DNA from: Octopus sinensis
Taxonomy: Eukaryota
NCBI RefSeq assembly: GCF_006345805.1
Contig: NW_021836736.1
Location: forward strand, 1 to 23,014
DNA length: 23,014 bases
Direction: 5' to 3'
Shown here in pieces: positions 1,818 through 23,014 of the stretch (position 1 is the first letter of the stretch; the number at the start of each line of letters is the position of its first letter). Under the pieces are notes generated by a model that was given only the letters and a program-made list of their open reading frames with translations, made no database searches and was not told the origin of the DNA. A program made the translations under genes and the position numbers.

Positions 1818-1954
1818 GCTATTCTTTGAGGTTTATTTAAGTTATTCGTAATATTTGAATCTTGTACAAACTGCCAAAACTTCATTCGTTTGAATCAAAA
1901 CTGAGAGAGATTAGCAAATATGAGAGTATATGGGTTGATAAGAGCATATATTGA

Positions 1955-2770: not shown

Positions 2771-2784
2771 ATATATATATATAT
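2662..2784. repeat. (TC)n/(TCTG)n-(TA)n microsatellite
   Basis: Directly visible. Confidence 0.9.
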
Positions 2785-3195
2785 ACTCTTTTACTCTTTT
2801 ACTCTTTTACTTGTTTCAGTCAGTTGACTGCGGCCATGCTGGAGCACCGCCTTTAGTCGAGCAAATCGACCCCGGGACTTATTCTTTGTAAGCCTAGTAC
2901 TTATTCTATCGGTCTCTTTTGCCGAACCGCTAAGTGACGGGGACATAAACACACCAGCATCGGTTGTCAAGCAATGCTAGGGGGACAAACACAGACACAC
3001 AAACATACATGCACACATATATATATATACATATATACGACGGGCTTCTTTCAGTTTCCGTCTACCAAATCCACTCACAAGGCTTTGGTCGGCCCGAGGC
3101 TATAGTAGAAGACACTTGCCCAAGGTGCCACGCAGTGGGACTGAACCCGGAACCATGTGGTTGGTAAGCAAGCCACTTACCACACAGTCACTCAT
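2784..3195 (-). mobile_element. Full-length CORE-like tRNA SINE (family C; octopus OR1/OR2-like)
   Basis: Minus strand has a head with B-box-like GGTTCAGTCCC, the CORE-like motif CCTTGGGCAAGT (3125-3114), an internal (TA)/(TG) microsatellite, and a tail ...CAGCATGGCCGCAGTCAACTGACTGAAACAAGT(AAAAGAGT)n. Near-identical copies are at 7708-8257 and 13646-14051. The OR1/OR2 name is from recollection. Confidence 0.88.
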
Positions 3196-3297
3196 ATACT
3201 GATATATATGTATCGAAACTGACTCATCATTATAGGGAATTCTCCACCGTTGCTTTTGGGTTTTTATGATCCCTGTCAGTATATATGTATAAAATTA

Positions 3298-3628
3298 TGT
3301 GCTTTGGGAAAGTGTCTTCTACAATAGCCTCGGGCCGATTAAAGCCTTGTGAGTAGATTTGGAAGTCGGAAACTGACAGAAGCCTGTCGCACATATATGT
3401 GTGTGTGTCTTTGTATCTGTGTTTGTTCACCCCCCGCCTCCCGCTCATTTGACAACCGATGTTGCTGAGTTTACCTCCCCATAACTTAACGGTTCGGTAA
3501 AAAAACCCCGATAGAATAAGTACTAGGCTTACAAAGAATAAGTCCTGGGGTCGATTTCTTCAACTAAAAGGCGGTGCTCCAGCATGGCCGCAGTCAAATG
3601 ACTGAAACAAGTAAAAGAATAAAAAGAC
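3298..3628 (+). mobile_element. CORE-like SINE (family C), head-truncated copy
   Basis: From TTGGGAAAGTGTCTTCTAC through GGCGGTGCTCCAGCATGGCCGCAGTCAAATGACTGAAACAAGTAAAAGAAT; inverted relative to 2784-3195. Confidence 0.88.
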
Positions 3629-4281
3629 TAAAACAAACTCAAATGAGGAGTATCAAAATCATTAAAATTCCTCATAAATAATCGATCACTAGTAATCGAT
3701 TTGACTTGAAGGACGAGTGTCAGTTTGCTTTGTTGTTTCACGGAAAACCCTAGCACTTTTAGGCTTTTATGCAAATCTGTCGTTAAATAACCCGATGCAT
3801 TTAATGCAGTAGCTGCAAAGGAGAACCGGCTGCTTGGGTTTGTGTGTTGTAAGGTGTTTGTTGCCAGAATGATAAGATACAGAACACAGAGGCCATTTAC
3901 TCGGACATTATGAATCTTTGTCCTTCTGTCTAGCATGATATTTTATCAGTGTTTCTGTTGATATGGAAGTGACCAATGGCAACTGATGTCTACCTAGTAT
4001 TCATGTCCAAGTTACGCATATATTCAAGTGTCCCGTTTGGTACCCCAAGTGGTGGTATTAGCTCTAGTACTGTAAAAACGTTATGATGTTGTTGTTTTTT
4101 TTATCGAATACAACAAGCTCTGGTTTACATATTTTCAAGGTTTGCCGAAGAATTTCCTCTGTCATTCTAATTTTCACACCTCGATATAGCGTCATCATTA
4201 TAAATTGTGTGGAAATGGTATCATTTGTCATGGGAGAAGACGTAGATAAACAGGCCATGTATGTATGTATGTATGTATGTA

Positions 4282-4542
4282 GGCTATTTAGCTTTATTTC
4301 TAGATTTATCGCCAATGGAGAAAGTGTTGGTTTCTAAACGCAGTTCAAGGCTAATTTACTGGAACTTCAACAACCTCAACAGGGTAGTGGTGCATGCATG
4401 TGTATGTATATGTGCAAGTATTTGGTGTCAGTACCGGTCTATATATTTTGTTTTATGAATGTGTTGCGTGCGTGACATGTGAATATCTATTTATACGCTA
4501 AGATTTTGGGAAGTCTGACATATTTTGACAATTCACTGATCT
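4282..4542 (-). mobile_element. 3' end of an RLE-type LINE (copy A) ending AAATAAAGCTAAATAGCCT-(ACAT)n
   Basis: Homologous to copy B: plus-strand AGATTTATCGCCAATGGAGAAAGTGTTGGTTTCTAA versus AGATTTCTTGCCAACAGAGAAAGCGTCGGTTTCTAA. A degenerate ITGTVKICKTFQ-like coding end lies at ~4540-4500. Confidence 0.65.
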
Positions 4543-4550
4543 GTGTATGT

Positions 4551-4936
4551 AAGCTATTATTCAGTTTTATTTCAAGATTTCTTGCCAACAGAGAAAGCGT
4601 CGGTTTCTAACATAGATCCAAGGCCCCTTCATTGAAATTTCAACATCAACGGGGTATGTATGTATGTATGTATGTATGTATGTATGTATGTATGTATGTA
4701 TGTATGTATGTATGTATATACGCAGATTTTATATGTTTTGTTTTATATATATATTTTCATGTATATAGTTACATATCTAGACATGCTCATATATACTTCA
4801 ATGATAAATTTCTGGAAAGTTTTACTGATTTTTACAGTTCCAGTGATGAACTGGATCTGTAGTCTACGAATCAGCCTTCTCCTTTTTGGTTTTGAGAAGC
4901 TTAATTTCTCAAGATTGGTATTTAGGCAGTGTGTTA
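4551..4936 (-). mobile_element. 3' end of an RLE-type LINE (copy B) ending AAATAAAACTGAATAATAGCTT-ACATAC
   Basis: The ORF-track peptide LEKLSFSKPKRRRLIRRLQIQFITGTVKISKTFQKFII resembles the extreme C-terminus of R4/Dong-like ORFs. The 3' UTR has an internal (TATG)n (~4657-4716) and a polyA signal. Confidence 0.68.
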
Positions 4937-7041
4937 GTATGTATGTATGTATGTATGTATGTATGTATGTATGTATGTATGTATGTATGTATACATGCTG
5001 TTCTGAATACATTTTTCAAATACCCTTCCATTAGACAAGAACTGGTCTCCAACCCAATGTTAGCTCCCTTTATTGGAATTTTGACAATAGCAACTACGTA
5101 TTTATGTTTGGAGGGATGTAACTATGTTACACATTGACATATGTATGCACGAGTGTGCCTGGGAATATTTTCTGAGGAACTCCTAACCTACTCTAATAAT
5201 ACTATCTGCTTAATGTAAGCAGAAATTATCCATGAATGCACCTCGTGGCTTGTTGGTTGCTGGGTGTTGCCGAAGGGATATGATGCTTCATTCAAAGGAT
5301 GTTTAAATCGATGTTAAGACTCTACCATGTTGTTTTCAATGTAGGTAAAGCTTGTCAATATCACTATTGATGTGGCGATTTCTGCTGGTAGTTAGTAGTT
5401 CCCGGGCTTTAACATTAATGGTCCAGATTCCATCTAAAATGTAGTCCAGCAGGCCAAGTACCAGTATAAATATTGGTACACAATATACATGAATGCCGTG
5501 CATAGAGCACTAAGAATCATACATTTTTCATCTGGGTGTTATGTCACGGGCTTTCATAGGACATATTTTCGTAGAAACAGTTGGGTTACTGATATATGTC
5601 GTTAGAGGTTCATTATTCGTATTAGTGGTTCATCGTTGTTCAACCTACGATGAGGGAACGTCTATCACGGCCAAACTTCATTCCGATGCTCTCTAACAAT
5701 GTCGTTTCTATATCAAATCCCATCTTCATATTGTTTATATTTTCGACATATACTTTTACATTATCCACAGGGAAGATGTATCTATCAATAAGCTGTTCTT
5801 ATAAACCAATCGCGTACTATTTTAGCGTTCCTCGACAAATAGAATAAGGTGTTCATTGTCTGGATAAACAGCGTAACAAGGAGACTGTCTCGAAATATGC
5901 TATCACACCACTGCCAGAACTGTATGATTGATTAAACTTTTGTCAGTACCTCATCAAACTCATTTCTCCCTCGCTGCTTATTCAGCTGAAATAGATTTTT
6001 TGTGTCATAGTCACAATGATCCTGGACGATTAGTGTAGATAAACTGCATAGATAAACTACATATATTAGATTCTGGCATGAAATTGCTGATTGCCATTTG
6101 AGTGGCTTTGTTCGTTTGTATCAGTATTATTTCTGCAAATACCAGCCAGATTGCTCTATTAGTATCTTCTCTGAGAGTTTGCTGATAGAAGCTGATAAGG
6201 TGTTGTCAATAAAAAGTAATTATTTGTACTGATTGCCAACAATCAAAACAATCAAACCTCTTTCTGGTGCTACCCAAAATCCTGACGTGTTTCTGTTATA
6301 ATTTCAAGTACGAGTATCAACATTGATACTATATAGTTTTAGTGCAACGTAGAGATAATCCTATCACACTCTTATACTGTGGGTTTTCATTAATACAGGG
6401 AGAATACATATTTCTTATTCACCCTGCATATAAACTCTTCTTTCTCTTGAATGAATCTGTATTCTCTCGGGAAATTGTCTCAGTGAAACTTTGTACCGTC
6501 CTCTCATCTTTTTGCAGCTTACTTTTTGATTTCAATTTCCTGCCTGTCAATTTCTTATAATGACAGTTTTTCACTGATAACTTTTAACTCTTGCTTAATG
6601 GTCATCAATTTGATTTCGAATGTCTCTTCTTGCTATCTCTAAACATATTTTGTGTTTTATGTTTCAATGTTTGTTGGAGAGAAATATATCTATTTGTGTG
6701 TTTACACTTGATATATACCACCTCATAGTTGATGGTCTTCCGTTGATGAAACAATCACTGAAGCAAAAAGTAATACGATTGATTTGCATCAGTTTATTTC
6801 TATATTATCTTCAAGATACTGCTTAACAGTTGTAGGAAGGCAATATAAACAAGAGGTTATTTGCCAGAATAATGACTCATTGCGTTTTTTTTCCAAATAT
6901 TCTCTATGTATATCTCTAATCACAGTCTGCATCAAATCTCTGGATCTCTTAGCGTTGATGAAATTTGGCCTCTCTCACATCCTTTGTATTAGCAACATAT
7001 CACTCTTCAATTAAAGCATTTCATTATCAATATCTATCAGA

Positions 7042-7460
7042 AGGCGGCGAGCTGGCAGAAACGTTAGCACGCCGGGCGAAATGCGTAGCCGTATTTCGTC
7101 TGCCGTTACGTTCTGAGTTCAAATTCCGCCGAGGTTGACTTTGCCTTTCATCCTTTCGGGATCGATTAAATAAATACCAGTTACGCACTGGGGTCGATAT
7201 AATCGACTTAATCCGTTTGTCTGTCCTTGTTTGTTCCCTCTTTGTTTAGCCCCTTGTGGGTAGTAAAGAAATAGGTATTTCGTCTGCCGCTACGTTCTGA
7301 GTTCAAATTCCACCTTTCATACTTTCGGGGTCGATTAAATAAGTACCAGTTATGCACTGGGGTCGATATAATCGACTTAATCCGTTTGTCTGTCCTTGTT
7401 TGTCCTCTCTGTGTTTAGCCCCTTGTTGGTAGTAAAAAAATGGGTATTTCGTCTGCCGTT
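7042..7460 (+). mobile_element. tRNA-derived SINE (family D) plus tandem head-less repeat units
   Basis: A-box-like TGGCAGAA (7053), B-box GAGTTCAAATTCC (7115-7127), central GCCTTTCATCCTTTCGGGATCGATTAAATAAATACCAG (Meta/MESC-domain-like from memory), tail AGCCCCTTGTGGGTAGTAAAGAAATA. GTATTTCGTCTGCCG recurs at 7091, 7275 and 7444. Confidence 0.85.
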
Positions 7461-7707
7461 GTTTGTAATTCTGTGCACAGTGGCTTACCTTAAGAAAAAA
7501 ACTGGTTTCTTTCCAAAGCACAATCAGGCAATCTCTACACATCTAGAGGAGACAGTCATATACTTCATCTCGATTCTTTTTCACTGACAGATTTAACGCT
7601 GTTTAACGGCGATAAACTGGATTCAAGTTCCTCTTTTTGCTAAATCGAAACATTTTTTTGTATTTAATTTCAACTTTTGTTAGTGAGAAGTGTTGCTATT
7701 TATTCTT

Positions 7708-7995
7708 TACTCTATTTTTCTCTTTTACTTGTTTCAGTCATTTGACTGCGGCCATGCTGGAGCACCGCCTTTAGTCGAGCAAATCGACCCCAGGACTTAT
7801 TCTTTGTAAGCCTAGTACTTATTCTATCGGTCTCTTTTGCCGAACCGCTAAGTGACGGGGACACATCAGCATCGGTTGTCAGGCGCTGTTGGGTGGTGGG
7901 GGACAAACACAGACACACAAGCATACACACACACACACACACACACACATACATACATACATAAATACATACATACATACATACATACATACAAC

Positions 7996-8055
<60 letters not shown>

Positions 8056-8257
8056 TATATATATATTATATTATACATATATATATATACACGTATATAC
8101 GACGGGTTTCTTTTAGTTTCCGTCTACCAAATCCACTCACAAGTCTTTGGTCGGCCCGAGGCTATAGTAGAAGACACTTGCCCAAAGTGCCACGCAGTAG
8201 GACTGAACCCGGAACCATGTGGTTGGTAAGCAAGCTACTTACCACAAAGCCGCTCCT
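7708..8257 (-). mobile_element. Full-length CORE-like SINE (family C) with expanded internal microsatellite
   Basis: Near-identical to 2784-3195; the internal (CA)(CATA)(TA) tract is expanded to ~7915-8100. Confidence 0.9.
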
Positions 8258-8974: not shown

Positions 8975-10169
8975 TTGCCTCCTCCTCATTCCCCCACCAC
9001 CACCACCACTACGCCGTCATCGTCATCGTCGCCGCCATTACTCGTCATTGTCAATTTTAGTTTAGCAATGACAGCGATGAACACCCCCACCGCCGCCGCT
9101 GCCCGGTACCACCACCGCCATCACCATCACCATCACCATCACCATCACCACTACTATTACTACTGTTAACAACAAATAACACCATTATCTCAAGAAACAT
9201 CTCCTCTGAAGACTACCACCTTCACTATACTCAATAAAACAGTCACCATCATCATATTCATCATTAATATCTCATTCTCTTCTCCTCATTTTCCTCTTCC
9301 TTATAATTCTCTTTCCCCTCCTCTTCCTCCTCCTCCTCCTCCTCCTCATCATCATCATCATCTTCATCATATTTCATCACCATCATTATCATGAGGATCA
9401 GTTTCGTCTTGGAGTTCATTGTCATCTTCATAGTTCTTACCATTCCGTATCTTTTCATCTTCTTCATCCTCCTTTTCATGAACCCCATCATCGCTGTCAT
9501 CGTCACCGCCACCACCGTCGACGTCGTCGTCCTCCTCCTCCTCTTCCTCTTCCCCACTCTCCTCCTCTTCCTCCTCCTCATTCTCATCCCCTTCCTCCTC
9601 CTCATTCTCATCCCCTTCCTCCTCCTCCTCTTCTCTCAGCACCATCAGCAACATGATCATTGACACCAGCCTCCTCCAACCCTCGCCCTCTTCTTCTACT
9701 CCTCCCCTTCCTCTTCAGCCTCCTCTTCCTCATCCTCTTCTCTCAGCACCATCACCAACACGATCATTGACACCAGCCTCCTCCTCCTACCCTCACCCTC
9801 TTCTTCTCCTCCACTCCCTCTTCCCCCTCCTCTTTCCCCTCCTCTTCCTCATCTCTCAACACCACCAACACGATCATTGACACCAGTCTCATGCTCCCCC
9901 TCCTCCCTCCTCCTCTCATGATCATCACAATCCTCCTCCCTCCTTCCTCCTCCTCATCATCATTCATCGCCACCACCATCTTTATCTCTGTTATCATTGA
10001 CGATGTGAGTATGTCATCAACTTCTCAATATCATTACAGCCTCAACTACATAGAAGATTATATTTTTATTCTCATACTTCTATTAATTTTCATTTCATTG
10101 ATTTTGCTGCTGTTATTATCATTATTGTTATTATTATTATTATCATCATTATTGTTATTATTATTATTA

Positions 10170-10221
<52 letters not shown>

Positions 10222-10230
10222 TGCTGCTGT
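8975..10230. repeat. Trinucleotide low-complexity field (CAC/CAT/CCT, ending in (TTA)n)
   Basis: Directly visible; contains three copies of GATCATTGACACCAG (9655, 9762, 9872). Confidence 0.9.
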
Positions 10231-10499
10231 ATTCCATATTATTCATATGTTTTTTTTTTAAAATTATTTAGTTCTTTGTGAATTTTTTTTTTCTTTCATT
10301 TCATATTTTTTTTCTTCTTCCACCATTACAATTCAAAATGAAGTATTCGCTATTGCAGTTGAAGCCATCCACCGTTTTTCAATATCAATTTTGTTGATGT
10401 TCTTCACCTAATTCATCATGGCTGCCAAAGAAAAATAGTCCATTGATAATTAAATTTCATCGCGGTTCAGAAGTTGGACATTTTTTTTTTCTTTTAAGA

Positions 10500-11095
10500 T
10501 AAAGAGAGAACGAAAGGGACCGAGAGCGAGAGAGAATAAGAGAGGTGGAGGAAGAGAAAGAAGGAGCATGACAAATAAAAGCAGACAAAGAGTAAAAGAA
10601 AGATTAAAGAGAGAAGAAAAAGAAAGAAGAGAAGTAAGAAAAAGGTAGAGAGAGAGAGAGGGAGCGAGAGAAAAAAGAGAGAATAAGAGAGAGATGGTGG
10701 GAGAGAATGAGAGAGAGAAAGAGAGAATAAAAGAGATGGAGGGAGAGAAAGAGAGAGAGAGAATAAGAGAGATGGAGGGGAGAAAGAGAGAATAAGAGAG
10801 ATGGAGGGAAACAAAGAGAGAGAGAGAGAGAGAGAAAGAGAGAATAAGAAGGAAAGAGAGAGAAAAAGAGAAAGAGAAAGAGAAAATAAGAAGGAGAGAG
10901 AGAGAGAGAGCATGACAGAAATAAAGACAGACAAAGAGCAAAAGAAAGATTAAAGAGCGAAAAAAAAGAAAGAGAAGGAAGAAAAGGCAGAGTGAGAGAG
11001 AGAGAGAGGGAAGAAGAGAGGGAGAGAGAGTGAGAAAAAGAGGCAGAGAGACAGGAAGGCAGAAAGAAAGATACAGACAAGGCTAAAAAGAGATT
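10500..11095. repeat. Polypurine (GA-rich) tract with internal minisatellite
   Basis: Almost all A/G on the + strand; GAGAATAAGAGAGATGGAGG-like units recur; GCATGACA...CAGACAAAGAG...AAAGAAAGATTAAAGAG is duplicated at 10566 and 10910. Confidence 0.9.
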
Positions 11096-11189
11096 TAGCT
11101 CATTTACATTTTTTTTTGCTTGTTGCTTTTTGGAGAGGTTTTTTTTTGTTTTATATCTTTCTTCGTTTCCTTCTTCTTGTCGTTATCGC

Positions 11190-11213
11190 TGTCATCATTG
11201 CAGTCGTCATATG

Positions 11214-11244
<31 letters not shown>

Positions 11245-11313
11245 CTTCTCCTTCTTCTCCAACTTCTTCATCTTACTATTGATATAACAACAATGGCAAC
11301 ACCACCACCAAAG

Positions 11314-11351
<38 letters not shown>

Positions 11352-11418
11352 TATTATTATTATTATTAATAATAATAATAATAATATTCGCATCATCATC
11401 AGCATTATTATCATCATC

Positions 11419-11452
<34 letters not shown>

Positions 11453-11960
11453 TGACCATCATCATCATCATCATCATCATGACCATCCTCCTCCTCCTCC
11501 TCCTCACCATCATCATTATCATCATTATCTTCATCACCATCATCATTGTCGTTGTCGTCGATGTCATCATCCTCCTCCTCCTCCTCATCATCATCATCAT
11601 CACCATCATCCTTATCATCATCATTGTCGTTGTCGTCGATGTCATCATCATCCGCATCATCATCACCACCATCCTCCTCCTCATCATCATCATAATCATT
11701 GTCGTCGTCGTCAGTATTCGTTTTCTTCCCCCTCCTCCTTATCATCATCATCAACGTCATCGTAATCCTCATCCTCCCCCTCCTCCTCCTCCTCCTCATC
11801 ATCATCTCATGGACGTCGTTATTATGAATTTCTTTTATAGTGTCTTTATTGTTGTTGTATTAATATCATAGTTGATATTATTGTCGATGTTGCTATCAAT
11901 ATTATTATCAGTATTATTAAGTTGTTCTTAATGTTATTGTTGTTGTTGTTGTTGTCGATG
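11190..11960. repeat. Trinucleotide field (CGT, TTA/TAA, CAT, CCT, TTG)
   Basis: Directly visible; CATTGTCGTTGTCGTCGATGTCATCATC is duplicated ~78 bp apart. Confidence 0.9.
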
Positions 11961-12086
11961 CCGTTGTTGTTTGCAATTTTCTTTTCTGATCTTCATCCTC
12001 ATTACTTCGTTGAACCGTCGTCGTCCCAGTCTCGCTGTTTGCACTGTTGGCTGTCAGCCGGTCCGTACGTGTTTATCATTCCATTA

Positions 12087-12479: not shown

Positions 12480-13091
12480 ATCTATCTATCTATCTCTCTC
12501 TTCTCTATCTATCTATCTATATATATATATATATCTATTTATCTATCAATTTATCTCTCTACACACACACAAACACACACACATATATATATACGTATAT
12601 GCATACATTGCAGATGCACATCCAAAAGCACCTAGCCCCGGAGTTACAATCAAATAAATACACACATTTGTATGTACGTGAGTGCGTATGTATGTATATG
12701 TATGTATGCATATATGTTTGTATGTATGTATGTATGTATGTATGTATGTATGTATGTATGTATGTATGTATGTATGTATGTAGTATGTATGTATGTATGT
12801 ATGTATGTGTGTATGTGTGTATGTATGTGTGTAGTATGTATGTAGTATGGTGTATGTATGTGGTATGTATGTATGTATGTATGTATGTATGTATGGTGTA
12901 TATGTATGAATGTATGTATGTATGTATGTAGGTATGTGGTGTAGTTGATGTAGTATGTATGTATGTATGTAGTATGTATGTATGTATGTAGGTGTATGTA
13001 TGTGTGTATGTATGTATGTATGTTGCATGTATGTATGTGGTATGTATGTATGTGTGTATGTATGTATGTATGTATGTATGTATGTATGTAT
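12087..13091. repeat. Microsatellite field: (CA)n, (TG)n, (TATC)n, long degenerate (TATG)n
   Basis: (CA)n ~12087-12195, (TATC)n ~12436-12545, (TATG)n ~12715-13091. Confidence 0.95.
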
Positions 13092-13545
13092 GGAGACCTT
13101 ATTAGAATGAAGGGTAGCACGATCCCTATGCAGATGCTATGTGGGAATGGAAAGAGACCCCGGCAGAAACCAAGGCTGCGATTTAAGGGCTGTGTCAAGT
13201 CCTCATTAAAGGCCTGTGATATGCAGGAGACTGACAGAGAGAGAGAGAGAGAGCAATGCTTGTCATCGCCCCAGATGGAGGAAGCAGGTTAAGGAGAAGG
13301 TCGACACCTTTGAGAGAGAATGTATTCTGCATAACGAACTTAAGTGTGCTGCTTGAAAGCGCAGTGCTGGTGTAGTGAATGGGGAAAGCTTGGTTTGCAA
13401 TGCTTGCAGTAGTGTATGCTTGTCAAGGGCAGGGCTCATTAGCCACCAACGGAGCCGCAAATGCAAAATATAAGTTAGTCCTAGAGCGCACAATGTTCCC
13501 GAAGGTCAGCAATGGTCTTCCTCGATCTCGAGTGGACGGCCATCA
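13092..13545 (+). mobile_element. 5'-truncated RTE-clade (BovB-like) LINE, 3' fragment
   Basis: GDLIRMKGSTIPMQMLCGNGKRPRQKPRLRFKGCVKSSLKACDM, then a shifted frame CHRPRWRKQVKEKVDTFERE...LVCNACSSVCLSRAGLISHQRSRKCKI* (stop 13471-13473). This is the characteristic RTE C-terminus with its CxxC...H motif, followed by a short 3' UTR. Confidence 0.88.
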
Positions 13546-13630
13546 TGTATGTATGTATGTATGTATGTATGTATGTATGTATGTATGTATGTATTGTATG
13601 TATGTATGTATGTACGTATGTATGTATGTA
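13546..13630. repeat. (TATG)n tract abutting the RTE 3' end
   Basis: Directly visible. Confidence 0.95.
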
Positions 13631-13645
13631 TACACTCTGTTTGAT

Positions 13646-14051
13646 TACTCTTTTACTCTTTTACTCGTTTCAGTCATTTGACTGTGGCTATGCTGGAGCA
13701 CCGCATTTAGTCAAGCACATCGACCCAGGACTTATTCTTTGTAAGCCTAGTACTTATTCTATCGGTCTCTTTTGCCGAACCTCTAAGTTATGGAGACGTA
13801 AACACACCAGCATCGGTTGTCAAGCGAAGTTGGGGGCGACAAACACAGACACCAAGATATACACACACATACATATATATATATATACATATATACGACG
13901 GGCTTCTTTCAGTTTCCGTCTACCAAATCCACTCACAAAGCTTTGGTTGGTCCGAGGCTATAGTAGAAGACACTTGCCAAGGTGCCATGCATGAGACTGA
14001 ACCCGGAAACATGTAGTTCGTAAGCAAGCTACTAACCACACAGCCACTCCT
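13646..14051 (-). mobile_element. Full-length CORE-like SINE (family C), more diverged copy
   Basis: Colinear with 2784-3195 from the (TACTCTTT)n tail to the ACCACACAGCCACTCCT head. Confidence 0.88.

Positions 14052-14281: not shown

Positions 14282-14282
<1 letters not shown>

Positions 14283-14362
<80 letters not shown>
14283..14362. repeat. (TATC)20 at the 5' junction of the Tx1-type LINE
   Basis: Perfect tetranucleotide run. Confidence 0.95.
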
Positions 14363-14365
<3 letters not shown>

Positions 14366-14462
14366 TCTATTATCTACACAAAATTTTGCCCCTTGTGGGC
14401 AAAATTTAAAAGAAAAAATTCTCATAGCCTTCGTGGTTTCATTTAGCCATTTTATTTCCAAA

Positions 14463-16558
14463 ATGGCCACGGTCACCACGAGGCTGAGGTGCAAGTCAAG
14501 CGTGACGCAGAGACAGAAAACAGGATGCTCTGTAGCATACGCTGAACCTGACAACAACACACCTCCACCACATCAACACCGACAACAGCCAACAAATACA
14601 AAACAAAGGTCGCAAGGCCAAGCACCGTCAACACCATCAGTGAGTCCACCACCAACACCGCAACACAACACCATGGCAGAATCTGCTACTAAAACTGCTA
14701 TCCCTGCTAAGACATCGCCACCAATAACAATACCAACATCACCATCACCGCCACCAAAGACCGTGCCGTCAATGCTACTAATACCACTAACACCCGCCGT
14801 CACCAAGAACGACACACAATAAACAACAAAAACAACAACAACACAACGACGACGACAACAACATTCCCTTCAACCACTGCTCACTCCATCACCAAGTGAA
14901 GAAATAACGACGACAAGCAAACGAAATGCCGAAATTTGCGCTAATGCAGGACTAAATTACGCAGGCAATTTTCCACCCCTTGCTAGTTGCATAATCAGCA
15001 ACCACAAACCTACAACCCACACCCTGCCATCAACACCAAACCACACCGGCCAGTAACAACAATAACAAAACAACAACAAACTTCGCCGATGCGATAAAGA
15101 AAAGGTAACAAAAGTTTGTTTACTACACAACAGATTAAAGATTGCAGAAACCTTATTACAAATGAAAACGGAAAAATACTCTTACACATACCTCAAGACA
15201 TACTGAATGAGGAGGAAAAAAAAGACAATTGTATATAAAATCACAAATAAAAAAACTAAAAGTCCAGAAAAGGCAAGCACAGACAAAGTCGAAAAGTGCT
15301 TACGCCCCATCTGGGGATACAAGGATTATGTGACTTGGGCGAACAAGTTCGCCCACGTACAGGTGGTTTTTTCAGAATGAAGAGTTGGAAGAAGAAATCT
15401 CAACGATAACCCTTCATTCTGATGAACTAACGATGACACCGAGTTCCTCGGCCAGAAGGTGACGAAGGTCATTATCAGTGGTGTCCCCCAAGTGACTACA
15501 CACTGTGGATAACATCCGCCGTACATCCGAAATGGAGGACTTAAACATCCTAGATATCGGTGTTCGAAAAACAAGGACTGGCTGGGAAAGAGAATAGAGT
15601 TCCTCTTCCACATAAGTCAAGACGACATAATAAAAATCCCCACCCACGTACATCTTGAGGATGCCCAAGTTATACGTAGTAGTCGAGGGCAGAAGGCCAC
15701 GATGCTATACATGTGGCAGTGAGGCACACCTCAAAAAGGAGTGCAATCTGCCGCGCAAATTACAACAACAACAGCCACATGAAAAATCACAAAAGCCAGC
15801 ATTATTGCCCACACACCAATATGACAGCTAGTCAAGAAGCTGTATGCGGAAATGCAGGAAAAACAACAAAGAACAAGCAACCCAACCAAACAACACCAAC
15901 ACCAGCGCCAAGAACAGAATCATCACCACCAACAACAAATAAACCAATTCCAACACCAAGAATAACAACGAAGAGACAAGCACCAAGGATGTAGGAGAGA
16001 CAATAACCACAACGAACCCCCAGCAACACCCTCCCCGCGCACCACAACAATATCTACAACCGCACAAACACACCCAGACGCTTTACCCCTGCCCCCTGCT
16101 GATTCGTCAGACTTTTCATCTAACGATGAAAGTTCGACAGGTGGCAAATAGCCACAGGGGTAAAAGAAAAAGATCAAGAAAAACCAAACAAGAAATCGCA
16201 ACCAAAGCAGGGAGATACCTGAACCCTGAAAACTCCATACACCAACAAAACAAGCACCAAACCACAAAAACAATGCTATCAGCGATAGACACCAAAGACT
16301 CCAAACTAATGGAGTACATCACAGGATACACAAACATTTGTGAAGATGACTTTAAAAATAGCAATCATCCACGCACTACACCACCCAAACACATCAAAAT
16401 ACTACACATCACACAAACACAACACCACAAACTCAAAGCCCTCTTCCCAAATGCTGTGGGGGGTTTCCAGAAATATCTATCCCAAAAACTACTATAAAAA
16501 CCTCCTCGAAGACACATCAAAGAACGAGGAAGCCAAAACTTTCGACACAAGTAAGTAA
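14463..16558 (+). pseudogene. Tx1-type ORF1 (gag-like nucleic-acid-binding protein), frameshifted
   Basis: ATG at 14463 (MATVTTRLR) and a long Thr/Pro/Asn-rich region. VVEGRRPR-CYTCGSEAHLKKEC contains a CX2CX4HX4C knuckle at 15703-15744. The last frame ends ...EEAKTFDTSK* at 16558. Confidence 0.8.
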
Positions 16559-16608
16559 CTCTCTGTACTTTCATTTTTGTGTTTTAAAGCACACACCCCA
16601 ATAGAATC

Positions 16609-19600
16609 ATGGTCAAGATTGGTTGTGTGAATGTGCGTGGCTTGGGGTCTCCTTGGAAACAAGGATATCTCCTAAATGATATCAAGTCATGATTTGGGAA
16701 TCATAGCCATAAGTGAGACCAGACTCCACGAGCCACGGGCCCTAAAGTCCATGTTTGGCGGACAGTTTAACATTATTTCGCTCCCTGTCTGCCGAGGATG
16801 GGCGGTAGTGGCACCGCGGTACTTTTTCACAAGAGCCTGGATCGAAGTCAAGACGATATTCGTAGACCCGGAGGGTAGACTGGTCGTTCTGGATGTTGAC
16901 GGCAGCAATGGGTGCGCTTTTCGACTCGTATCAGTCTACGCACCGCACTAAAAGGTCGGGCGGATTTCTTTCGACGTCTAGAAGTATCTTGGGAACGTCT
17001 CGTCCTTTACTCTTAGTGGGGGATTGGAATGCTACCTTGGACACGCATGTGATACGTGGGTACGTGGTAGAGACAGAAACAGAAGGGGATGCAAATGCCT
17101 CAGAGACCTGCTCAGACGATTCCAACTGTCTGACAGGTACCGACTCGACCACCCAATGCACCAACGTGGACATGGAGCAACCGCAGTGGTCGTCGAGATC
17201 GTATCTAGATAGGATACTGTGTAGGACAGTAGACAAGGATAACTTAGGATGTCCACAATTCCACACAGTCAGCTACACGGATCACAAATTGGTGACGTGT
17301 ACGCTAGACTTAGATAAGGCACATAGACAGGGTCCTGGGTACTGGAAACTGAACGCATCATTCCCGTCCAGACAAGTTTTCAGAGACCGGATTAGCACAC
17401 TAGTAAAGAGGGCTTTGACGGGAGCCATCATCAACAACAAATGGTGGTTTGCCCTCAAAGAGCAGTAAAAGCAGAAGCGATTAGGTACAGCAAAGCATTA
17501 GCCATAGATAGAATAGAGAGTAGAGGGTGAGCTAGTTAAGAAGCTAGAAGAGGCAATTAGAAGCGGCATCGCATCCGACGTTTTGGCGGCGAGGTTGGCC
17601 CTCGACCACCACTTCAACGCCAACACGAAGGATGTGCTGTCAGAGCTAGGATGCGTGCTCTAAGGAACGAAGGTGTTGGAGCCGCGAGAGAGGCCCGGTG
17701 GCAGAGGCGCAACAGGGCAACAAAGCCACCATTCGGTCACTGGTAGTAGATGAACAGGGGCGCGAATTGCTCGAGCCAAGTAAAATGTGTGAGGCCTTTC
17801 AGGCATTTTGCCCGACTGTTCGGACGAGTGGAGGCACAAGAACGTAGGGTGGACTTCAGTGCCTACCTACATAGCCTACCACGACTCTCGACAAGAAAGG
17901 CAGGGTGCTGCGAAGGTGCCATCACGGCAGGCGGAAGTGCGGGAAGCGATGGCAGAATGCTCGAGGGACAAATAACCGGGTTTGGATGGTCTACCCTACG
18001 AGCTTTACAATTGTATGCCAGACTTGTTTGGAGATCTCTTGGCGGCGGTGTGTACTGCAACTGGCAGCAAAACGGGAGCATTCCTGGTTTTGTGAGCCGA
18101 GGAACCGTAACACTGTGAAGAAAGATCTAAACAAGGGAAATGTAATAGATAACTTTAGGCCCCATCTCTGCTAATGCAGACTTGAAAATTTTGGCCAAGG
18201 TGCTAGCCAAGAGGTTGGCGCTTGTCATCGAGAAACTGGTCGAACGGCGCAAAACATGCGCCGTGCCAGGCCGGACCATCCATGACAACCTCCATCTGAT
18301 GCGCTACATCATAGACAGGGTAGTTAACGAACCTGGCATGGGTGGGGCCCTGATCAAATTGGATCAATCAAAGCCTTGATAGGGTAGATCATCGATACTT
18401 GGAGGCAGTCCTGAGAGCGGCTGGTTTCGGTCCCGTCTTCCGCGGCTGGATAGCTGCCTTGTACAGAGGCATCCGTTCGGTAATTCGCGTAAATGGACAT
18501 CTATCGAGACCTTTCGACATTGCACGTTCGGTCCGTCAGGGATGGCCCCTCTCGGCGCTTCTATACGTATTGACTCTTGAGCCACTACTGCGGAAGCTGG
18601 CGACTCTAAGGGGCATCCCGCGAGAATTGGGATGCGGGACGAGCGTGTCTGCATACGCGGACGACGTCACCGTCATAGTGTCAAGCCACGAGCACATCGA
18701 GGGGTCGGCGAGACACTGAAAGACTACGAAGCGCGGTGACAGGAGCAAAAATCAACCGGGAAAAGTCAGTGGGCTTGCGGCTCGGCACCTGGAGAAGCAA
18801 GCCCATGCCGTCCACCAGTACCTCCGTCGTGGGACGCTGGACAGACGGCCCGGTTGAGTTGCTCGGGGTCTGGTTCGGTCTGGACCTCCAAATGGAGAAG
18901 AACTGGAACGAGATAACGAGTAGGGTGGTCACTCTCGCCCAGCAATGGGCCGAGAGGAAACTGTCCCTAAAAGGTCGGGCGGAGGTGGTGAACGCGTACA
19001 TCGCGTCCATCATCTACTACCGCCTGACCGTCGTACCTTGTCCCGACCCTACCATCACCAAACTAGAACGCATCCTCTACCGCTTCTTGTGGAAAGGATG
19101 CGTCCCGATGGTCAGGCGATCCATTTGCTGTCAACCACCCGTTAAAAGGAGGGCTGGGCATGCCGTGGTTGATGATGCGCAGACACGCGCTGAGACTGCG
19201 ACATCTCCGGCTCTATGTAGACGACGGTGAACAGGTGTGGTCGCCGTTGTGAGGTACGCATTCCCGCAATCGTCTCCATGACCGAACTACAGTCGTGGAT
19301 CAAAAAGAGGCCGATAAAGGCGAATGGCACCGCGAGTGTCGCGTTGCTCTCAAGCAACTCTGCCGTCCCGGGTCGACCTTGAGTGACTTCAACACAACCA
19401 AAGCATTCTATAGGGGATTAGTGGAGGGGAGGTACGACGACGAGCTCGGGGCAAACCTGGGCGTCGACGAGGAATACCTGACCCGCCTGTTTCAAAACGA
19501 CTTTCGGCCCGGGACCTATGGACAACTTCCAGAGATCCCTGGCCTGGCGGTGCTACCGAGAAGCGCTACCCGTTCGGGATAAGCTCTATAGGCATGGCTC

Positions 19601-20039
19601 GAGAAACACGGGGCCGACCTGCCCGAGATGCGGGCAGAGCGACGAAACCGCTCTGCACGCACTCGTGCAGTGTCCAGCAATTTCCCACCTGTGGGCTTAT
19701 GTCGAACGACTGCTGTCACGTGTGGGACGTGTCGGTTTATCAGCCGAGTCTATCGTTAATATCGTCACACCTCCTTCCTTCAAACGGGAAGGAAGAGCTA
19801 TTTTTATCATACTTGTGGCTATGGCGAAAGAATGTATCTGGTGGACGCGCCTGAAAGGATTAGAGACAAACACTTTCCTCTCTGGTCAATCTCCCATCAA
19901 CTTCTTCAAGTATCACTTGAAGAAAAAAGTGAGAGTAGAGAGGCAAGTTTTGTCTAGTGAATGTTTTAAAAAAAGATGGGTGAATGTAGCAAGGATGGCA
20001 CGTATGAATGACGAAGCCACCTTGACTATGATTCTATGA
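16609..20039 (+). pseudogene. Tx1-type ORF2 (APE endonuclease, reverse transcriptase, C-terminal zinc finger), frameshifted
   Basis: APE motifs: MVKIGCVNVRGL, AISETRL, VGDWN, SYLDRIL, YTDHKLV, followed by GPGYWKLNAS. RT motifs: GLDGLPYELY, KILAKVLAKRL, PGRTIHDNL, VRQGWPLSALLYVLTLEPL, AYADDV, GAKINREKS. Downstream: LSLKGRAEVVN and CPRCGQSDETALHALVQC; stop at 20037-20039. Confidence 0.92.
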
Positions 20040-20415
20040 ACCGTAAAAATTAATACAGAGAGTTGCTTATTTGCAAAAAAAAAAATAAAAAATAAGAAAT
20101 ATAACATGTGACTTCATTGACCGAGGTTACTGTGGTCTTTTCCGTAGGCTTTTCTTTCCACGGGTAAACCTCATCTGTCCTCCCCTTTACACTTCATATT
20201 GACATTTCTGTGATAACGATCCATATTGATCAATTTTTTTTCCTCTCCCCCTTTTTTTTTCACCCCCCCTTTTTTTGTCCTCTTTCTCTCCTTTTACGAT
20301 CCCTTTTGATCGACCCCCCCTTTTTTTAATTTTTATTTTTATTTTTTATTTTTTTTACCTTCAAAAGAAAAGCTTTACCTTGTAATTTGTTCTATCTGTG
20401 TGCAGCCCTGTGTGG

Positions 20416-20421
20416 AATAAA
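20416..20421 (+). promoter_or_regulatory. Polyadenylation signal of the Tx1 element (also at 20985 and 21681 in the truncated copies)
   Basis: AATAAA lies 6 nt before the element end in all three copies. Confidence 0.6.
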
Positions 20422-20448
20422 GAAACATATCTATCTATCTATCTATCT

Positions 20449-20892
20449 GAGCTATTTTTCATCATCTCTTGTGGCTATGGCTAAGGAATGTATCTTGTGG
20501 ACGCGTCTGAAAGGATTGGAGACAACCCTTTCCTCTCTGGTTCAATCTCTCTCAACTTCTTCAAGTACCACTTGAAAAGGAAAGTGAGAGTAGAGAGGCA
20601 AGTTTTGTCTAGCGAATGTTTTAAAAAAAGATGGGTGATGTACAAGAATGGCACGTATGAATGACGAAGCCACCTTGAGCATAGTCCTATGAACCCAGAA
20701 ATCGAAAACAGAAGTTGCTTATTTGCAAAAAAAAAAAAAAAAAATAAGAATATAAATGTGACTTCATTGACCGAGGTTACCGTGGTCTTTTCGCAGGCTT
20801 TCTTTCCACGGTAAACCTCACCTGTCCTCCCCTTTACACTTCATATTGACATTTCTGTGATAACGATCCCTATTGATCATTTTTTTTCCCTC

Positions 20893-20924
<32 letters not shown>

Positions 20925-20996
20925 TTAATACCTTCAAAAGAAAAGCTCTACCTTGTAATTTGTCTCTGTGGCAGCCTGGTGGCTAATAAAGAAACA
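20449..20996 (+). mobile_element. 5'-truncated Tx1 copy 2
   Basis: Colinear with the long copy from position 19795 to its end; preceded by (TATC)5 (20428-20447) and followed by (TATC)12 (20997-21044). Confidence 0.92.
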
Positions 20997-21046
<50 letters not shown>

Positions 21047-21053
21047 CTATATG

Positions 21054-21692
21054 CACGTGTGGGACGATCCGGTTTATCAGCCTAGTCTATCATCAATATT
21101 GTCACGCCTTCTTCCTTCAAACGGGAAGGAAGAGCTATTTTCATCATTCTTGTGGATATGGCGAAAGAATGTATCTGGTGGACGCGTCTGAAAGGATTGG
21201 AGACAAACACTTTCCTCTCTGGTCAATCTCTCATCAACCTCTTCAAGTATCACTTGAAAAGGAATATGAGAGTAGGGAGGCAAGTTTTATCTAGTGAATG
21301 TTTCAAAAAAAGATGGGTGAAAGTAGCAAGGATGGCACATATGAATGACGAAGCCACCTTGAGCATAATCCTATGAACTCGGAAAATTTAAAACAGAGGG
21401 TTACTTACTTGCAAACAAATGTGTTAACATGTGACATTATTAACCGAGGTTACCGTGGTCTTTTCCGTAGGCTTTTCTTTCCACGGATAAACCTTATCTA
21501 CTTCCCCCTTTACACTTTACATCATAACATTTCTGTGATACACGATCCCTATTGATCGTTTTTTTCTTTCCCTTTTACGATCCCTTTTGATCGAAAACCT
21601 ACCCCACTTTCTTTTTCTCTCCCCAAAAAGAAAAGCTCTACTTTGTAATTTGTCCCGTCTGTGTGCAGCCATGTGTGGCTAATAAAGAAACA
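21054..21692 (+). mobile_element. 5'-truncated Tx1 copy 3
   Basis: Colinear with the long copy from position 19717; ORF end ...MAKECIWWTRLKGLETNTF...ATLSIIL* (21152-21376); followed by CATC(TATC)17. Confidence 0.92.
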
Positions 21693-21693
21693 C

Positions 21694-21776
<83 letters not shown>

Positions 21777-21796
21777 CTTCTTTCTTTCTTTCTTTC
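21693..21796. repeat. (TATC)n grading into (TTTC)n
   Basis: TATC register 21693-21764, then TTTC units to ~21796. Confidence 0.95.
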
Positions 21797-22896: not shown

Positions 22897-23014
22897 AGGA
22901 GTGGCTGTGTGTGGTAAGTAGCTTGCTTACCTACCATATTGTACCAGGTTCGGTCCTACTGCGTGGCATCTTGGGCAAGTGTCTTCTACTATAGACTCGG
23001 GCCGATCAAAGCCT
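22897..23014 (+). mobile_element. CORE-like SINE (family C), 5' part, cut by the window edge
   Basis: AGGAGTGGCTGTGTGTGGTAAGTAGCTTGCTTACC...CTTGGGCAAGTGTCTTCTACTATAG matches the family head. Confidence 0.88.

What the first reader, a model, noticed from the sequence alone, without database searches (positions are those of the whole stretch)
4257..4992. Second microsatellite-bounded array: RLE-type LINE ends in (TATG)n, with a reconstructable empty site
Seen: (ATGT)6 (4257-4281) - copy A - short GTATGT - copy B - (GTAT)14 (4937-4992). Both copies are on the minus strand and end AAATAAA...AATAGC-NT-ACATAC. Collapsing the interval gives CAGGCC-ATGTAT-ACATGCTG. On the minus strand this reads VFRTACIHGLFI, restoring an LHGxF-like motif expected at this position of the surrounding R4/Dong-like relic, and the site contains the palindrome CATGTATACATG. 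Known: Dong (R4 clade) targets (TAA)n and occurs in molluscs. Inference: an (ACAT)n-targeting or (ACAT)n-tailed RLE family inserted at a minimal ATACAT seed that then expanded, so these elements may both use and create the TATG microsatellites that dominate the window.
Basis: partly seen in the sequence, partly recalled or inferred. Interest (0 to 1): 0.75.

Follow-up and report, generated by a model that had tools for sequence, protein, structure and literature searches.

The report
Retroposon tail cluster with ACAT microsatellites
This stretch of what looks like an octopod genome is an ordinary head-to-tail pile-up of short retroposon 3' ends whose own (ACAT)n tails form the local microsatellites; the proposed endonuclease type, older "relic" and rebuilt empty site are not supported.

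Summary
The repeats are real, but the layout was misread. On the minus strand the order is: C (5094-4993), (ATAC)14, S1 (4936-4718), (ATAC)16, B (4653-4551), ACATAC, S3 (4544-4422), a degenerate ACAT-like tract, A (4385-4282), (ACAT)6, then the flank.

A and B are about 75% identical. S1 and S3 are also homologous, so a composite unit [S - microsatellite - ~100-bp T unit - microsatellite] occurs twice.

The right "flank" (4993-5094) is a third, older T copy that ends in register at the array. The reconstructed empty site therefore joins an element's end to unrelated flank.

The motif AAATAAA-N-CT-N(1-9)-AATAGC occurs three times in the window. All three are on the minus strand and abut an (ACAT)n array, including a separate locus at 1818 beside (GTAT)73. 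This marks a dispersed retroposon family with an (ACAT)n tail.

Nothing supports an RLE or R4/Dong identity. The flanks show no RT or RLE signal in Pfam, the flank ORF has no relative among 1.84 billion proteins, and the only near-complete microsatellite-tailed LINE in the window has APE-type motifs.

True (ACAT)n targeting cannot be separated from insertion into an earlier tail or from unequal exchange. This is ordinary and of low interest.

The parts
4993..5094 (-). Copy C: an older, diverged ~100-nt T unit (retroposon 3' end). Its last bases ...GAACAGCATGT abut the (ATAC)14 array.
   Evidence: B vs C local score 18.0; 0/1000 shuffles reach it and 0/3000 real window segments do, maximum 15.5. 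nhmmer A+B profile positions 6-69 hit 5094-5033 on the minus strand, E=0.029. Four-way alignment is in register up to the array.
4937..4992 (-). (ATAC)14 on the minus strand, (GTAT)14 on the plus strand. A perfect array read as the tail of copy C and the landing or exchange site for the next unit.
   Evidence: TRF: period 4, 14.0 copies, 100% matches.
4718..4936 (-). S1: a 219-nt segment upstream of B across an internal microsatellite. It is the longer copy of the S part of the composite unit.
   Evidence: S1 positions 89-193 align with S3 positions 4-105, score 31.5 vs shuffle mean 11.3, z=11. nhmmer S profile hits only 4935-4719 and 4544-4426. No protein homologue for its 63-aa ORF.
4654..4717 (-). 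(ATAC)16 on the minus strand, (GTAT)16 on the plus strand.
   Evidence: TRF: period 4, 16.0 copies, 100% matches; sequence.
4551..4653 (-). Copy B of the T unit. It ends AAATAAAACTGAATAATAGC-TT-ACATAC.
   Evidence: Alignment with A; motif hit at 4553-4572 on the minus strand.
4545..4550 (-). ACATAC: the 1.5-unit tail of copy B, at the junction with S3.
   Evidence: Sequence.
4422..4544 (-). S3: the second copy of S, about 75-85 nt shorter than S1 at its 5' end (75 nt by reading the sequence; S3 position 4 aligns with S1 position 89).
   Evidence: Homology to S1.
4386..4421 (-). Degenerate CATA/CATG microsatellite between S3 and A. It is the counterpart of the (ATAC)16 between S1 and B.
   Evidence: Sequence; TRF period-12 row at 4398-4421.
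4282..4385 (-). Copy A of the T unit. It ends AAATAAAGCTAAATAGC-CT-(ACAT)6.
   Evidence: motif hit at 4283-4299 on the minus strand.
4257..4281 (-). (ACAT)6 tail of copy A, (ATGT)6.2 on the plus strand.
   Evidence: TRF: 100% matches.
3639..4256 (-). Flank F, downstream of the array on the minus strand. It is bounded at 3638 by an inverted SINE-like repeat and is not demonstrably a LINE relic.
   Evidence: No Pfam hit. ORF 4255-4067 has no RT relatives. The only signal is a weak 32-aa resemblance at 4018-3923 to the C-terminus of the plus-strand LINE ORF2: E=0.039, z=3.2-5.1. SINE copy at 3304-3638.
1818..1838 (-). Copy D: the same 3'-terminal motif (AAATAAACCTCAAAGAATAGC), directly abutting the (GTAT)73 array at 1530-1818. 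Its upstream body is unrelated to A/B.
   Evidence: Third and last window hit of AAATAAANCT-N(1-9)-AATAGC; 0 matches expected in 100 shuffles. Alignment; no body similarity.

Best explanation
The interval is a head-to-tail cluster, on the minus strand, of dead 3'-terminal pieces of a non-LTR retroposon family. The family could be a LINE 3' end or a LINE-dependent short element.

Its RNA ends in a conserved terminal motif (AAATAAA...AATAGC) followed directly by an (ACAT)n tail. The microsatellites here are those tails, copied from the RNA during target-primed reverse transcription and later lengthened or shortened by slippage.

Proposed sequence of events:
- The oldest visible member (C) supplied the first (ACAT)n tract.
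- Later copies of a composite unit [S - internal (ACAT)n - T - (ACAT)n] were added at that tract: first U1 (S1 + B), then the 5'-shorter U2 (S3 + A).
- This happened because an (ACAT)n RNA tail can base-pair with a nicked (ATGT)n/(ACAT)n target, so existing tails are preferred landing sites.

Shown:
- Homology of A/B/C and of S1/S3, and their order.
- The shared terminal motif abutting (ACAT)n at two separate loci.
- Perfect young arrays next to elements that are 25-45% diverged.
- The same head-to-tail behaviour in the window's other microsatellite-tailed LINE.

Inferred:
- Retrotransposition of the composite, rather than DNA-level duplication of it.
- The priming mechanism.
- The order of events.

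Unknown:
- The endonuclease type of the autonomous partner. The only local precedent is APE-type.
For: - Layout and perfect arrays.
- A~B: z=26, and 0 of 3000 real window segments score as high.
- S1~S3: z=11.
- C is homologous and in register with its array.
- The motif AAATAAANCT-N(1-9)-AATAGC has exactly 3 hits, all on the minus strand and all abutting (ACAT)n, with 0.00 expected from 100 shuffles. One hit is an independent locus at 1818 with a different body. This indicates a dispersed family with a conserved 3' end, as in LINE/SINE partners.
- S3 is about 75-85 nt shorter than S1 at its 5' end, and only ACATAC lies upstream of it. This fits 5' truncation.
- Internal precedent: the plus-strand LINE ends AATAAAGAAACA(TATC)n and is followed by two 5'-truncated copies. 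They begin at different LINE positions (about 3296 and 3210) and each starts right after the previous copy's tail.
- Its Argonauta hians relative keeps the terminal GTGGCTAATAAA(A)GAAA motif but carries (ATT)n instead.
- Literature: RTE elements with very short 3' UTRs made of SSR units, and their 3' partial copies, seed microsatellite families (PMC2887409). [quoted passage not shown]
Against: - No full-length or other genomic copy could be recovered, so the family's LINE or SINE nature and its enzyme are unproven.
- A, B and C all begin at the same position (GTTGA...) immediately after repeat-like sequence. Random 5' truncation would not do this. It requires that T be a discrete unit behind an internal microsatellite, or that A/B arose by DNA-level duplication.
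- No S-like sequence is detectable upstream of C (z about 0).
- No target-site duplications can be read inside a microsatellite.
- No stable or conserved RNA structure was found in T.
- The motif pattern was tuned after seeing copy D, so its chance estimate is somewhat optimistic.
Confidence: 0.6

Rival explanations
1. DNA-level tandem duplication. One insertion-derived composite [S - microsatellite - T - microsatellite] was duplicated by unequal crossing-over or replication slippage between the flanking (ACAT)n arrays. A/B and S1/S3 are then paralogous halves of one duplication, not separate insertions.
For: - S and T alternate strictly: C, S1, B, S3, A.
- A and B share the same 5' end.
- A-B divergence (about 25%) and S1-S3 divergence (about 35%) are compatible with one event, given roughly 100-nt samples.
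- Long perfect arrays on either side give ample substrate for misalignment.
Against: - S3 lacks the first ~75-85 nt of S1 and has only ACATAC upstream, so an extra deletion is needed.
- The same 3' motif plus array at an unlinked site (1818) shows that the family does move.
- The other LINE array in the window has copies with different truncation points, which is insertional.
Confidence: 0.22
2. An RLE-type (R4/Dong-like) LINE family that targets (ACAT)n inserted twice at a minimal ATACAT seed inside an older R4/Dong-like relic. Removing 4257-4992 restores the relic's reading frame.
For: - (ACAT)-type repeats lie on both sides of A and B.
- Dong elements occur in molluscs, and a full-ORF Dong is in the O. 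bimaculoides repeat library (PMC3812793, PMC9115989).
- The collapsed frame does read VFRTACIHGLFI.
- The RT fragment of the window's plus-strand LINE scores better against R2 than against L1 structures. That element nevertheless has APE motifs.
Against: - The right flank is a T-family copy ending in register at the array.
- No RT or RLE Pfam hit in the collapsed flanks at E<=10.
- No similarity of the flanks to the window's LINE at DNA level, and none significant at protein level.
- The ORF across the junction is not colinear beyond chance (z about 1.5).
- The flank ORF has no RT relatives in 1.84e9 proteins.
- The T units have no ORF, no codon-phase bias and no protein relatives.
Confidence: 0.06
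3. Not transposon-derived. The region is a decaying higher-order tandem repeat (minisatellite or satellite) with a period of about 270-440 bp and microsatellite spacers.
For: Two and a half periods of T-microsatellite-S-microsatellite, with start-to-start distances of 441 and 268 bp.
Against: - Periods are unequal and TRF reports no long-period array here.
- The terminal motif plus (ACAT)n recurs at 1818 with a different body.
- The 3' ends carry an AATAAA-containing terminus, like the window's bona fide LINE.
Confidence: 0.05

Closest known systems
RTE-clade LINEs whose very short 3' UTR is a simple-sequence repeat, and the microsatellite families seeded by their 3' partial copies (Lepidoptera, PMC2887409; Octopus vulgaris RTE-2_OV, PMC9115989)
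   Same: - A conserved 3' end is followed directly by a short tandem repeat.
- Most copies are short 3' fragments.
- The copies explain shared flanks of many microsatellites.
- Slippage during or after retrotransposition lengthens the repeat.
   Different: - No RTE ORF or any ORF could be tied to the T unit.
- Here a second segment (S) and an internal microsatellite travel with it.
- Clade membership is untested.
Waldo elements (R1 clade, APE-type) that insert into ACAY microsatellites (WaldoAg1/2, WaldoFs1; PMC3812793)
   Same: The same repeat class, (ACAT)n being a case of (ACAY)n, is found on both sides of copies.
   Different: - Waldo is a full LINE with proven site specificity in insects.
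- Here only ~100-390-bp fragments are seen.
- The 5'-side repeats can all be attributed to a neighbour's tail.
- Waldo's 3'-end structure was not compared.
Dong / R4 clade (RLE-type) elements that target (TAA)n, including DongBg in a snail (PMC3812793); a full-ORF Dong is in the O. bimaculoides repeat library (PMC9115989)
   Same: Association with microsatellites, head-to-tail arrays, and presence in molluscs.
   Different: - The repeat is (ACAT)n, not (TAA)n.
- No RT or RLE signal in the units or flanks.
The window's own plus-strand LINE (about 14.4/15.2-20.43 kb; APE motifs, RVT_1, zf-RVT) with a (TATC)n tail and two 5'-truncated followers
   Same: - An AATAAA-containing terminus lies 7-12 nt before the tail repeat.
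- New copies sit directly on the previous copy's tail.
   Different: - Different tail unit and a different body; there is no significant DNA similarity.
- Its followers have different 5' truncation points, whereas A, B and C start at one position.
Composite short elements with internal proto-microsatellites, such as dipteran mini-me (recalled from general knowledge, not checked here)
   Same: A short non-coding unit carries an internal and a terminal repeat tract that expand independently.
   Different: This rests on memory only. No sequence or structural comparison was made.

Membership tests
R4/Dong clade (RLE-type non-LTR retrotransposons) | Single ORF with RT followed by a C-terminal CCHC zinc knuckle and a PD-(D/E)XK restriction-like endonuclease | tested here: not met
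   - The T and S units have no ORF, no protein relatives and no codon-phase bias.
- The collapsed flanks give 0 Pfam families at E<=10.
- The flank ORF has no RT or RLE relatives.
- No full-length master could be obtained, so this result applies only to what is in the window.
R4/Dong clade (RLE-type non-LTR retrotransposons) | Site-specific insertion into a defined repeat, (TAA)n for Dong, with target repeats on both sides of independent copies | tested here: inconclusive
   - The repeat is (ACAT)n, not (TAA)n.
- Repeats lie on both sides of A and B, but each 5'-side repeat follows another element's end.
- Copy D shows no ACAT tract within 150 nt upstream, and its 5' end is unknown.
Microsatellite-tailed ('stringent'-type) LINE/SINE 3' ends (RTE, CR1, L2, Rex1-like) | A conserved 3'-terminal sequence directly followed by a short tandem repeat, shared by dispersed copies | tested here: met
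   The motif AAATAAANCT-N(1-9)-AATAGC has 3 of 3 hits abutting (ACAT)n on the same strand, at two loci 2.4 kb apart, with 0 expected. Copy C is in register.
Microsatellite-tailed ('stringent'-type) LINE/SINE 3' ends (RTE, CR1, L2, Rex1-like) | Variable 5' truncation among copies | tested here: inconclusive
   S3 is ~75-85 nt shorter than S1, but A, B and C share one 5' end.
Microsatellite-tailed ('stringent'-type) LINE/SINE 3' ends (RTE, CR1, L2, Rex1-like) | An RT-encoding autonomous master (or LINE partner) carrying the same 3' end | not testable with these tools
   - The host genome is not in the searchable collections. The best relative of the window's LINE is 77% identical, and the only named one is Argonauta hians.
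- Metagenome scans found 0 hits.
- 20.8 kb of Argonauta sequence holds no significant T or S match: no S hit at E<=1, and the best T hit has E=0.26.
Microsatellite-tailed ('stringent'-type) LINE/SINE 3' ends (RTE, CR1, L2, Rex1-like) | A conserved 3' stem-loop recognised by the RT | tested here: not met
   RNAalifold consensus energy is -1.85 kcal/mol with a positive covariation term. Single-sequence folds are no more stable than shuffles, z=+0.3 to +1.4. Power is low with only 3-4 decayed copies.
Waldo (R1 clade, APE-type, ACAY-specific) | ORF1 plus an ORF2 with an N-terminal APE and RT, and specific insertion in ACAY repeats | not testable with these tools
   No coding part of the T family is available. 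Only the repeat class matches.

The most novel reading that the evidence does not exclude
The T family (or its LINE partner) is a genuinely (ACAT)n-specific retroposon lineage in octopods. It would travel as a composite with an internal microsatellite, so that each insertion both uses an existing tetranucleotide array and plants two new ones. That would help explain the density of same-strand TATG arrays in this genome.
Probability: 0.15. Interest if true: 0.45.

Novelty: new member of a known kind. Interest (0 to 1): 0.2.

Why it matters
The main value is for annotation. Several tetranucleotide arrays in this window are retroposon tails, not free-standing microsatellites. This affects repeat libraries, marker design and assembly in cephalopod genomes.

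If true (ACAT)n targeting were shown genome-wide, it would add a molluscan case to the short list of microsatellite-specific non-LTR elements. It would also offer a self-reinforcing route for microsatellite spread.

As it stands, this is a routine example of a well-described phenomenon.

Tried and rejected
1. RT/RLE relic in the flanks. Pfam on three minus frames of 3000-4256 + 4993-6600 gave 0 families. tblastn of the window's LINE ORFs and of seven C-terminal homologues gave nothing significant; the best hit was E=0.039 at 4018-3923. A profile of those homologues against six-frame translations found no minus-strand hit. The DNA profile of the LINE 3' region hit neither flank.
2. By-eye colinearity of the collapsed frame 'KMYSEQHVYMACLSTSS...' with the zf-RVT region looked tempting but failed shuffling tests (z=1.2-3.4), so I dropped it.
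3. The 'LETNTF' 6-mer is shared by copy A frame 0 and the LINE ORF2 (1 of 500 shuffles in one test out of 18; DNA-level E=0.17). This is too weak and is kept only as a note.
4. A three-frame translation of all units (771 aa) sent to the protein index timed out. A shorter version (199 aa) gave no hit at E<=10. The S1 ORF shared no candidate words.
The 63-aa flank ORF returned only 3 multi-stretch, low-complexity proteins without RT domains.
6. Two metagenome scans, for the T 3' motif plus ACAT and for the T body, found 0 hits.
7. A search of the held O. vulgaris transcriptome excerpt for the T end found 0 hits.
8. Rfam found 0 families. RNA folding showed no signal.
9. The codon-phase test on A/B/C differences gave 10/8/6, no bias.
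10. A search for S-like sequence upstream of C or in F found none.
Full report
**What is at 4257-4992**

The sequence and TRF output confirm a perfect (ATGT)6.2 at 4257-4281 and a perfect (GTAT)14 at 4937-4992.

Read 5'->3' on the minus strand, the interval and its right edge are:

| Segment | Coordinates |
|---|---|
| C | 5094-4993 |
| (ATAC)14 | 4992-4937 |
| S1 | 4936-4718 |
| (ATAC)16 | 4717-4654 |
| B | 4653-4551 |
| ACATAC | 4550-4545 |
| S3 | 4544-4422 |
| degenerate CATA/CATG tract | 4421-4386 |
| A | 4385-4282 |
| (ACAT)6 | 4281-4257 |
| flank F | 4256 downwards |

**Are the repeats real?**

- A and B are about 75% identical over ~100 nt. The local score is 45.5 against a shuffle mean of 8.2 (z=26), and none of 3000 real random window segments scores as high.
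The nhmmer S profile hits only those two places.
- What is repeated is therefore a composite [S - microsatellite - ~100-nt T unit - microsatellite], not two bare copies separated by GTATGT.

**The right flank is a third copy**

- The 102 nt just right of the terminal array (4993-5094) align with B in the same orientation. The score of 18.0 was reached by 0 of 1000 shuffles and exceeds the maximum of 15.5 over 3000 real segments.
- An A+B profile finds 5094-5033 as its best non-self hit in the whole window (E=0.029), at profile positions 6-69. This places the copy in register, with its end at the array.
- In the four-way alignment, C's terminus ...GAACAGC-ATGT-(ATAC)n lines up with ...AATAGC-CT-(ACAT)n in A and ...AATAGC-TT-ACATAC in B.
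- This undoes the proposed empty site. The join CAGGCC-ATGTAT-ACATGCTG fuses the terminus of an older element of the same family to flank F.
- The peptide VFRTACIHGLFI is present in the collapse, but it partly reads through that terminal motif.
- The 12-nt palindrome depends on how many repeat bases one chooses to keep.

**A conserved 3' end plus an (ACAT)n tail**

The pattern AAATAAANCT-N(1-9)-AATAGC occurs exactly three times in 23 kb, counting both strands, with 0.00 expected from 100 shuffles. All three hits are on the minus strand and all lie 0-2 nt from an (ACAT)n array:

- A at 4283-4299.
- B at 4553-4572.
- A separate site, D, at 1818-1838, beside the (GTAT)73 array at 1530-1818.

D's upstream body is unrelated to A/B. 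A short conserved terminus shared by otherwise different bodies and followed by a simple repeat is the signature of microsatellite-tailed non-LTR retroposons and their dependent short elements. The pattern was widened after I had seen D, so the chance figure is somewhat generous. D's position and strand were not chosen, however.

**A local precedent**

The same window holds a near-complete LINE on the plus strand.

- Its ORF pieces carry APE motifs (ISETRL, VYAPH, GDWNATLD, YTDHKLV). Pfam gives a weak Exo_endo_phos hit (E=0.0017, below the cutoff), RVT_1 (7e-10) and zf-RVT (6e-9).
- It ends ...GGAATAAAGAAACA(TATC)n. Two 5'-truncated copies follow, each starting right after the previous copy's tail, at different LINE positions of about 3296 and 3210.
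- It is colinear with a copy in Argonauta hians from window position 15207 to 20036. That copy keeps the terminal GTGGCTAATAAA(A)GAAA motif but carries (ATT)n.
- Microsatellite-tailed LINEs that stack head to tail therefore occur here, and the example at hand is APE-type, not RLE-type.

**Tests of the RLE / R4-Dong relic idea**

- Three minus frames of the collapsed flanks (3000-4256 + 4993-6600) hit no Pfam family at E<=10.
- The window's LINE ORFs and seven C-terminal homologues find nothing significant in 3600-8000. The best hit is a 32-aa stretch at 4018-3923: E=0.039, z=3.2-5.1 depending on target length.
- I saw several tempting by-eye colinearities across the junction. They failed shuffling (z about 1.5) and I do not rely on them.
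- The only long flank ORF (4255-4067, 63 aa), searched exhaustively against 1.84 billion representatives, returned three multi-stretch low-complexity proteins with no RT or endonuclease domain.
- The T and S units have no protein relatives, no codon-phase bias in their differences, no Rfam match and no fold more stable than shuffles.

**Most likely mechanism**

I read the arrays as the elements' own tails.

- C's tail provided an (ACAT)n tract.
- Composite copies U1 (S1 + B) and U2 (S3 + A, ~75-85 nt shorter at the 5' end) were then added there. An (ACAT)n RNA tail can prime reverse transcription on a nicked (ACAT)n/(ATGT)n target.
- The perfect 14- and 16-unit arrays sit beside elements that are 25-45% diverged. 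This shows that the repeats kept turning over by slippage long after insertion.

Two features do not fit simple independent 5'-truncated insertions: S and T alternate strictly, and A, B and C share the same 5' start. They fit if T lies behind an internal microsatellite of a composite element. They also fit if the composite was duplicated at DNA level by unequal exchange between the arrays. The window alone cannot separate these two readings, so I give the DNA-duplication rival 0.22.

**Is it (ACAT)n-targeting?**

- Repeats flank A and B on both sides, but every 5'-side repeat is the tail of a neighbour.
- D shows no ACAT tract within 150 nt upstream, and its 5' end is unknown.
- The plus-strand LINE does have a (CTAT)24 array at 14282-14376, about 830 nt upstream of its detectable 5' region. 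That hints at repeats on both sides for that family but was not pursued.
- True targeting remains open.

**Comparison with known systems**

| Known system | Relation to this finding | Source |
|---|---|---|
| RTE-type LINEs whose very short 3' UTR is an SSR, and whose 3' partial copies seed microsatellite families | Closest description | PMC2887409 |
| Waldo (APE-type, R1 clade) | Targets ACAY repeats | PMC3812793 |
| Dong (RLE-type), including a snail element | Targets (TAA)n | PMC3812793 |
| Full-ORF Dong | Present in the O. bimaculoides repeat library | PMC9115989 |

Membership in any of these clades cannot be tested without a coding master.

**Limits**

The best protein relatives of the window's LINE are 77% identical, and the only named one is from Argonauta hians.
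- Two metagenome scans and a transcriptome excerpt gave nothing.
- All inferences about the T family rest on four copies in one 23-kb window.

**Verdict**

This is a new member of a known kind and of low interest.

Noticed in passing
window 14282-21796 (+): Near-complete LINE with ORF pieces carrying APE motifs, RVT_1 and zf-RVT. It ends AATAAAGAAACA(TATC)n at about 20430-20448. Two 5'-truncated copies follow (20449-21050 and 21046-21796), each beginning on the previous tail. A (CTAT)24 array at 14282-14376 lies upstream of its detectable 5' region (from 15207), so this family may be flanked by TATC-type repeats on both sides.
   Followed up: partly
L001 10730-11310 (Argonauta hians, GCA_054771915.1): The Argonauta copy of the same LINE keeps the terminal motif GTGGCTAATAAAAGAAATA but is followed by (ATT)n instead of (TATC)n. 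The tail repeat unit therefore differs between relatives while the terminus is conserved. This 20.8-kb locus has no tetranucleotide array of 6 or more units.
   Followed up: partly
window 7144-7458 (+); L001 5000-5355 and other sites: A 169-bp tandem repeat (1.9 copies, 93% matches) ends in about 40 nt resembling the last 40 nt of the plus-strand LINE (nhmmer E=0.005 and 0.026). The same ~40-nt match recurs many times in the Argonauta locus. This suggests a short dependent element or satellite sharing the LINE's 3' end.
   Followed up: no
window 2780-3193 (+), 3304-3638 (-), 7697-8257 (+), 13639-14051 (+), 22897-23014 (-): A ~400-bp SINE-like repeat (80-95% identity between copies). It has a (TACTCTTT)n-like start and an internal CA/CATA/TA microsatellite. 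The (ACAT)30 array at 7927-8046 is this internal repeat. Two copies begin right after other microsatellites (2672-2785 and 13545-13631).
   Followed up: partly
window 4296-4337 (-) vs 19859-19900 (+): Copy A, in one frame, reads LETNTFSIGDKSRN against LETNTFLSGQSPIN in the plus-strand LINE's ORF2 C-terminus, including synonymous third-base differences. At DNA level E=0.17, and 1 of 500 shuffles reached the score in one of 18 tests. This may be chance, or a trace of T's origin from a LINE coding end.
   Followed up: partly
window 3923-4018 (-): CVTWT*ILGRHQLPLVTSISTETLIKYHARQK resembles CIWWTRLKGLETNTFLSGQSPINFFKYHLKKK, the same ORF2 C-terminal region (E=0.039 in 4.4 kb, z=3.2-5.1). It is too weak to call flank F a LINE relic.
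   Followed up: partly
window 12686-13110: The largest TATG-type array, (GTAT)104, is followed on the minus strand by ...TTCTAATAAGGTCTCC-(ATAC)n. This is another AATAA-containing end abutting the repeat, possibly a different tailed retroposon.
   Followed up: no
window 9000-12000 (-): A long acidic low-complexity coding-like stretch (D/E/G-rich ORFs, for example 11104-11805, 233 aa), flanked by (TTA)35 and (ATT)18 arrays. Its nature was not examined.
   Followed up: no
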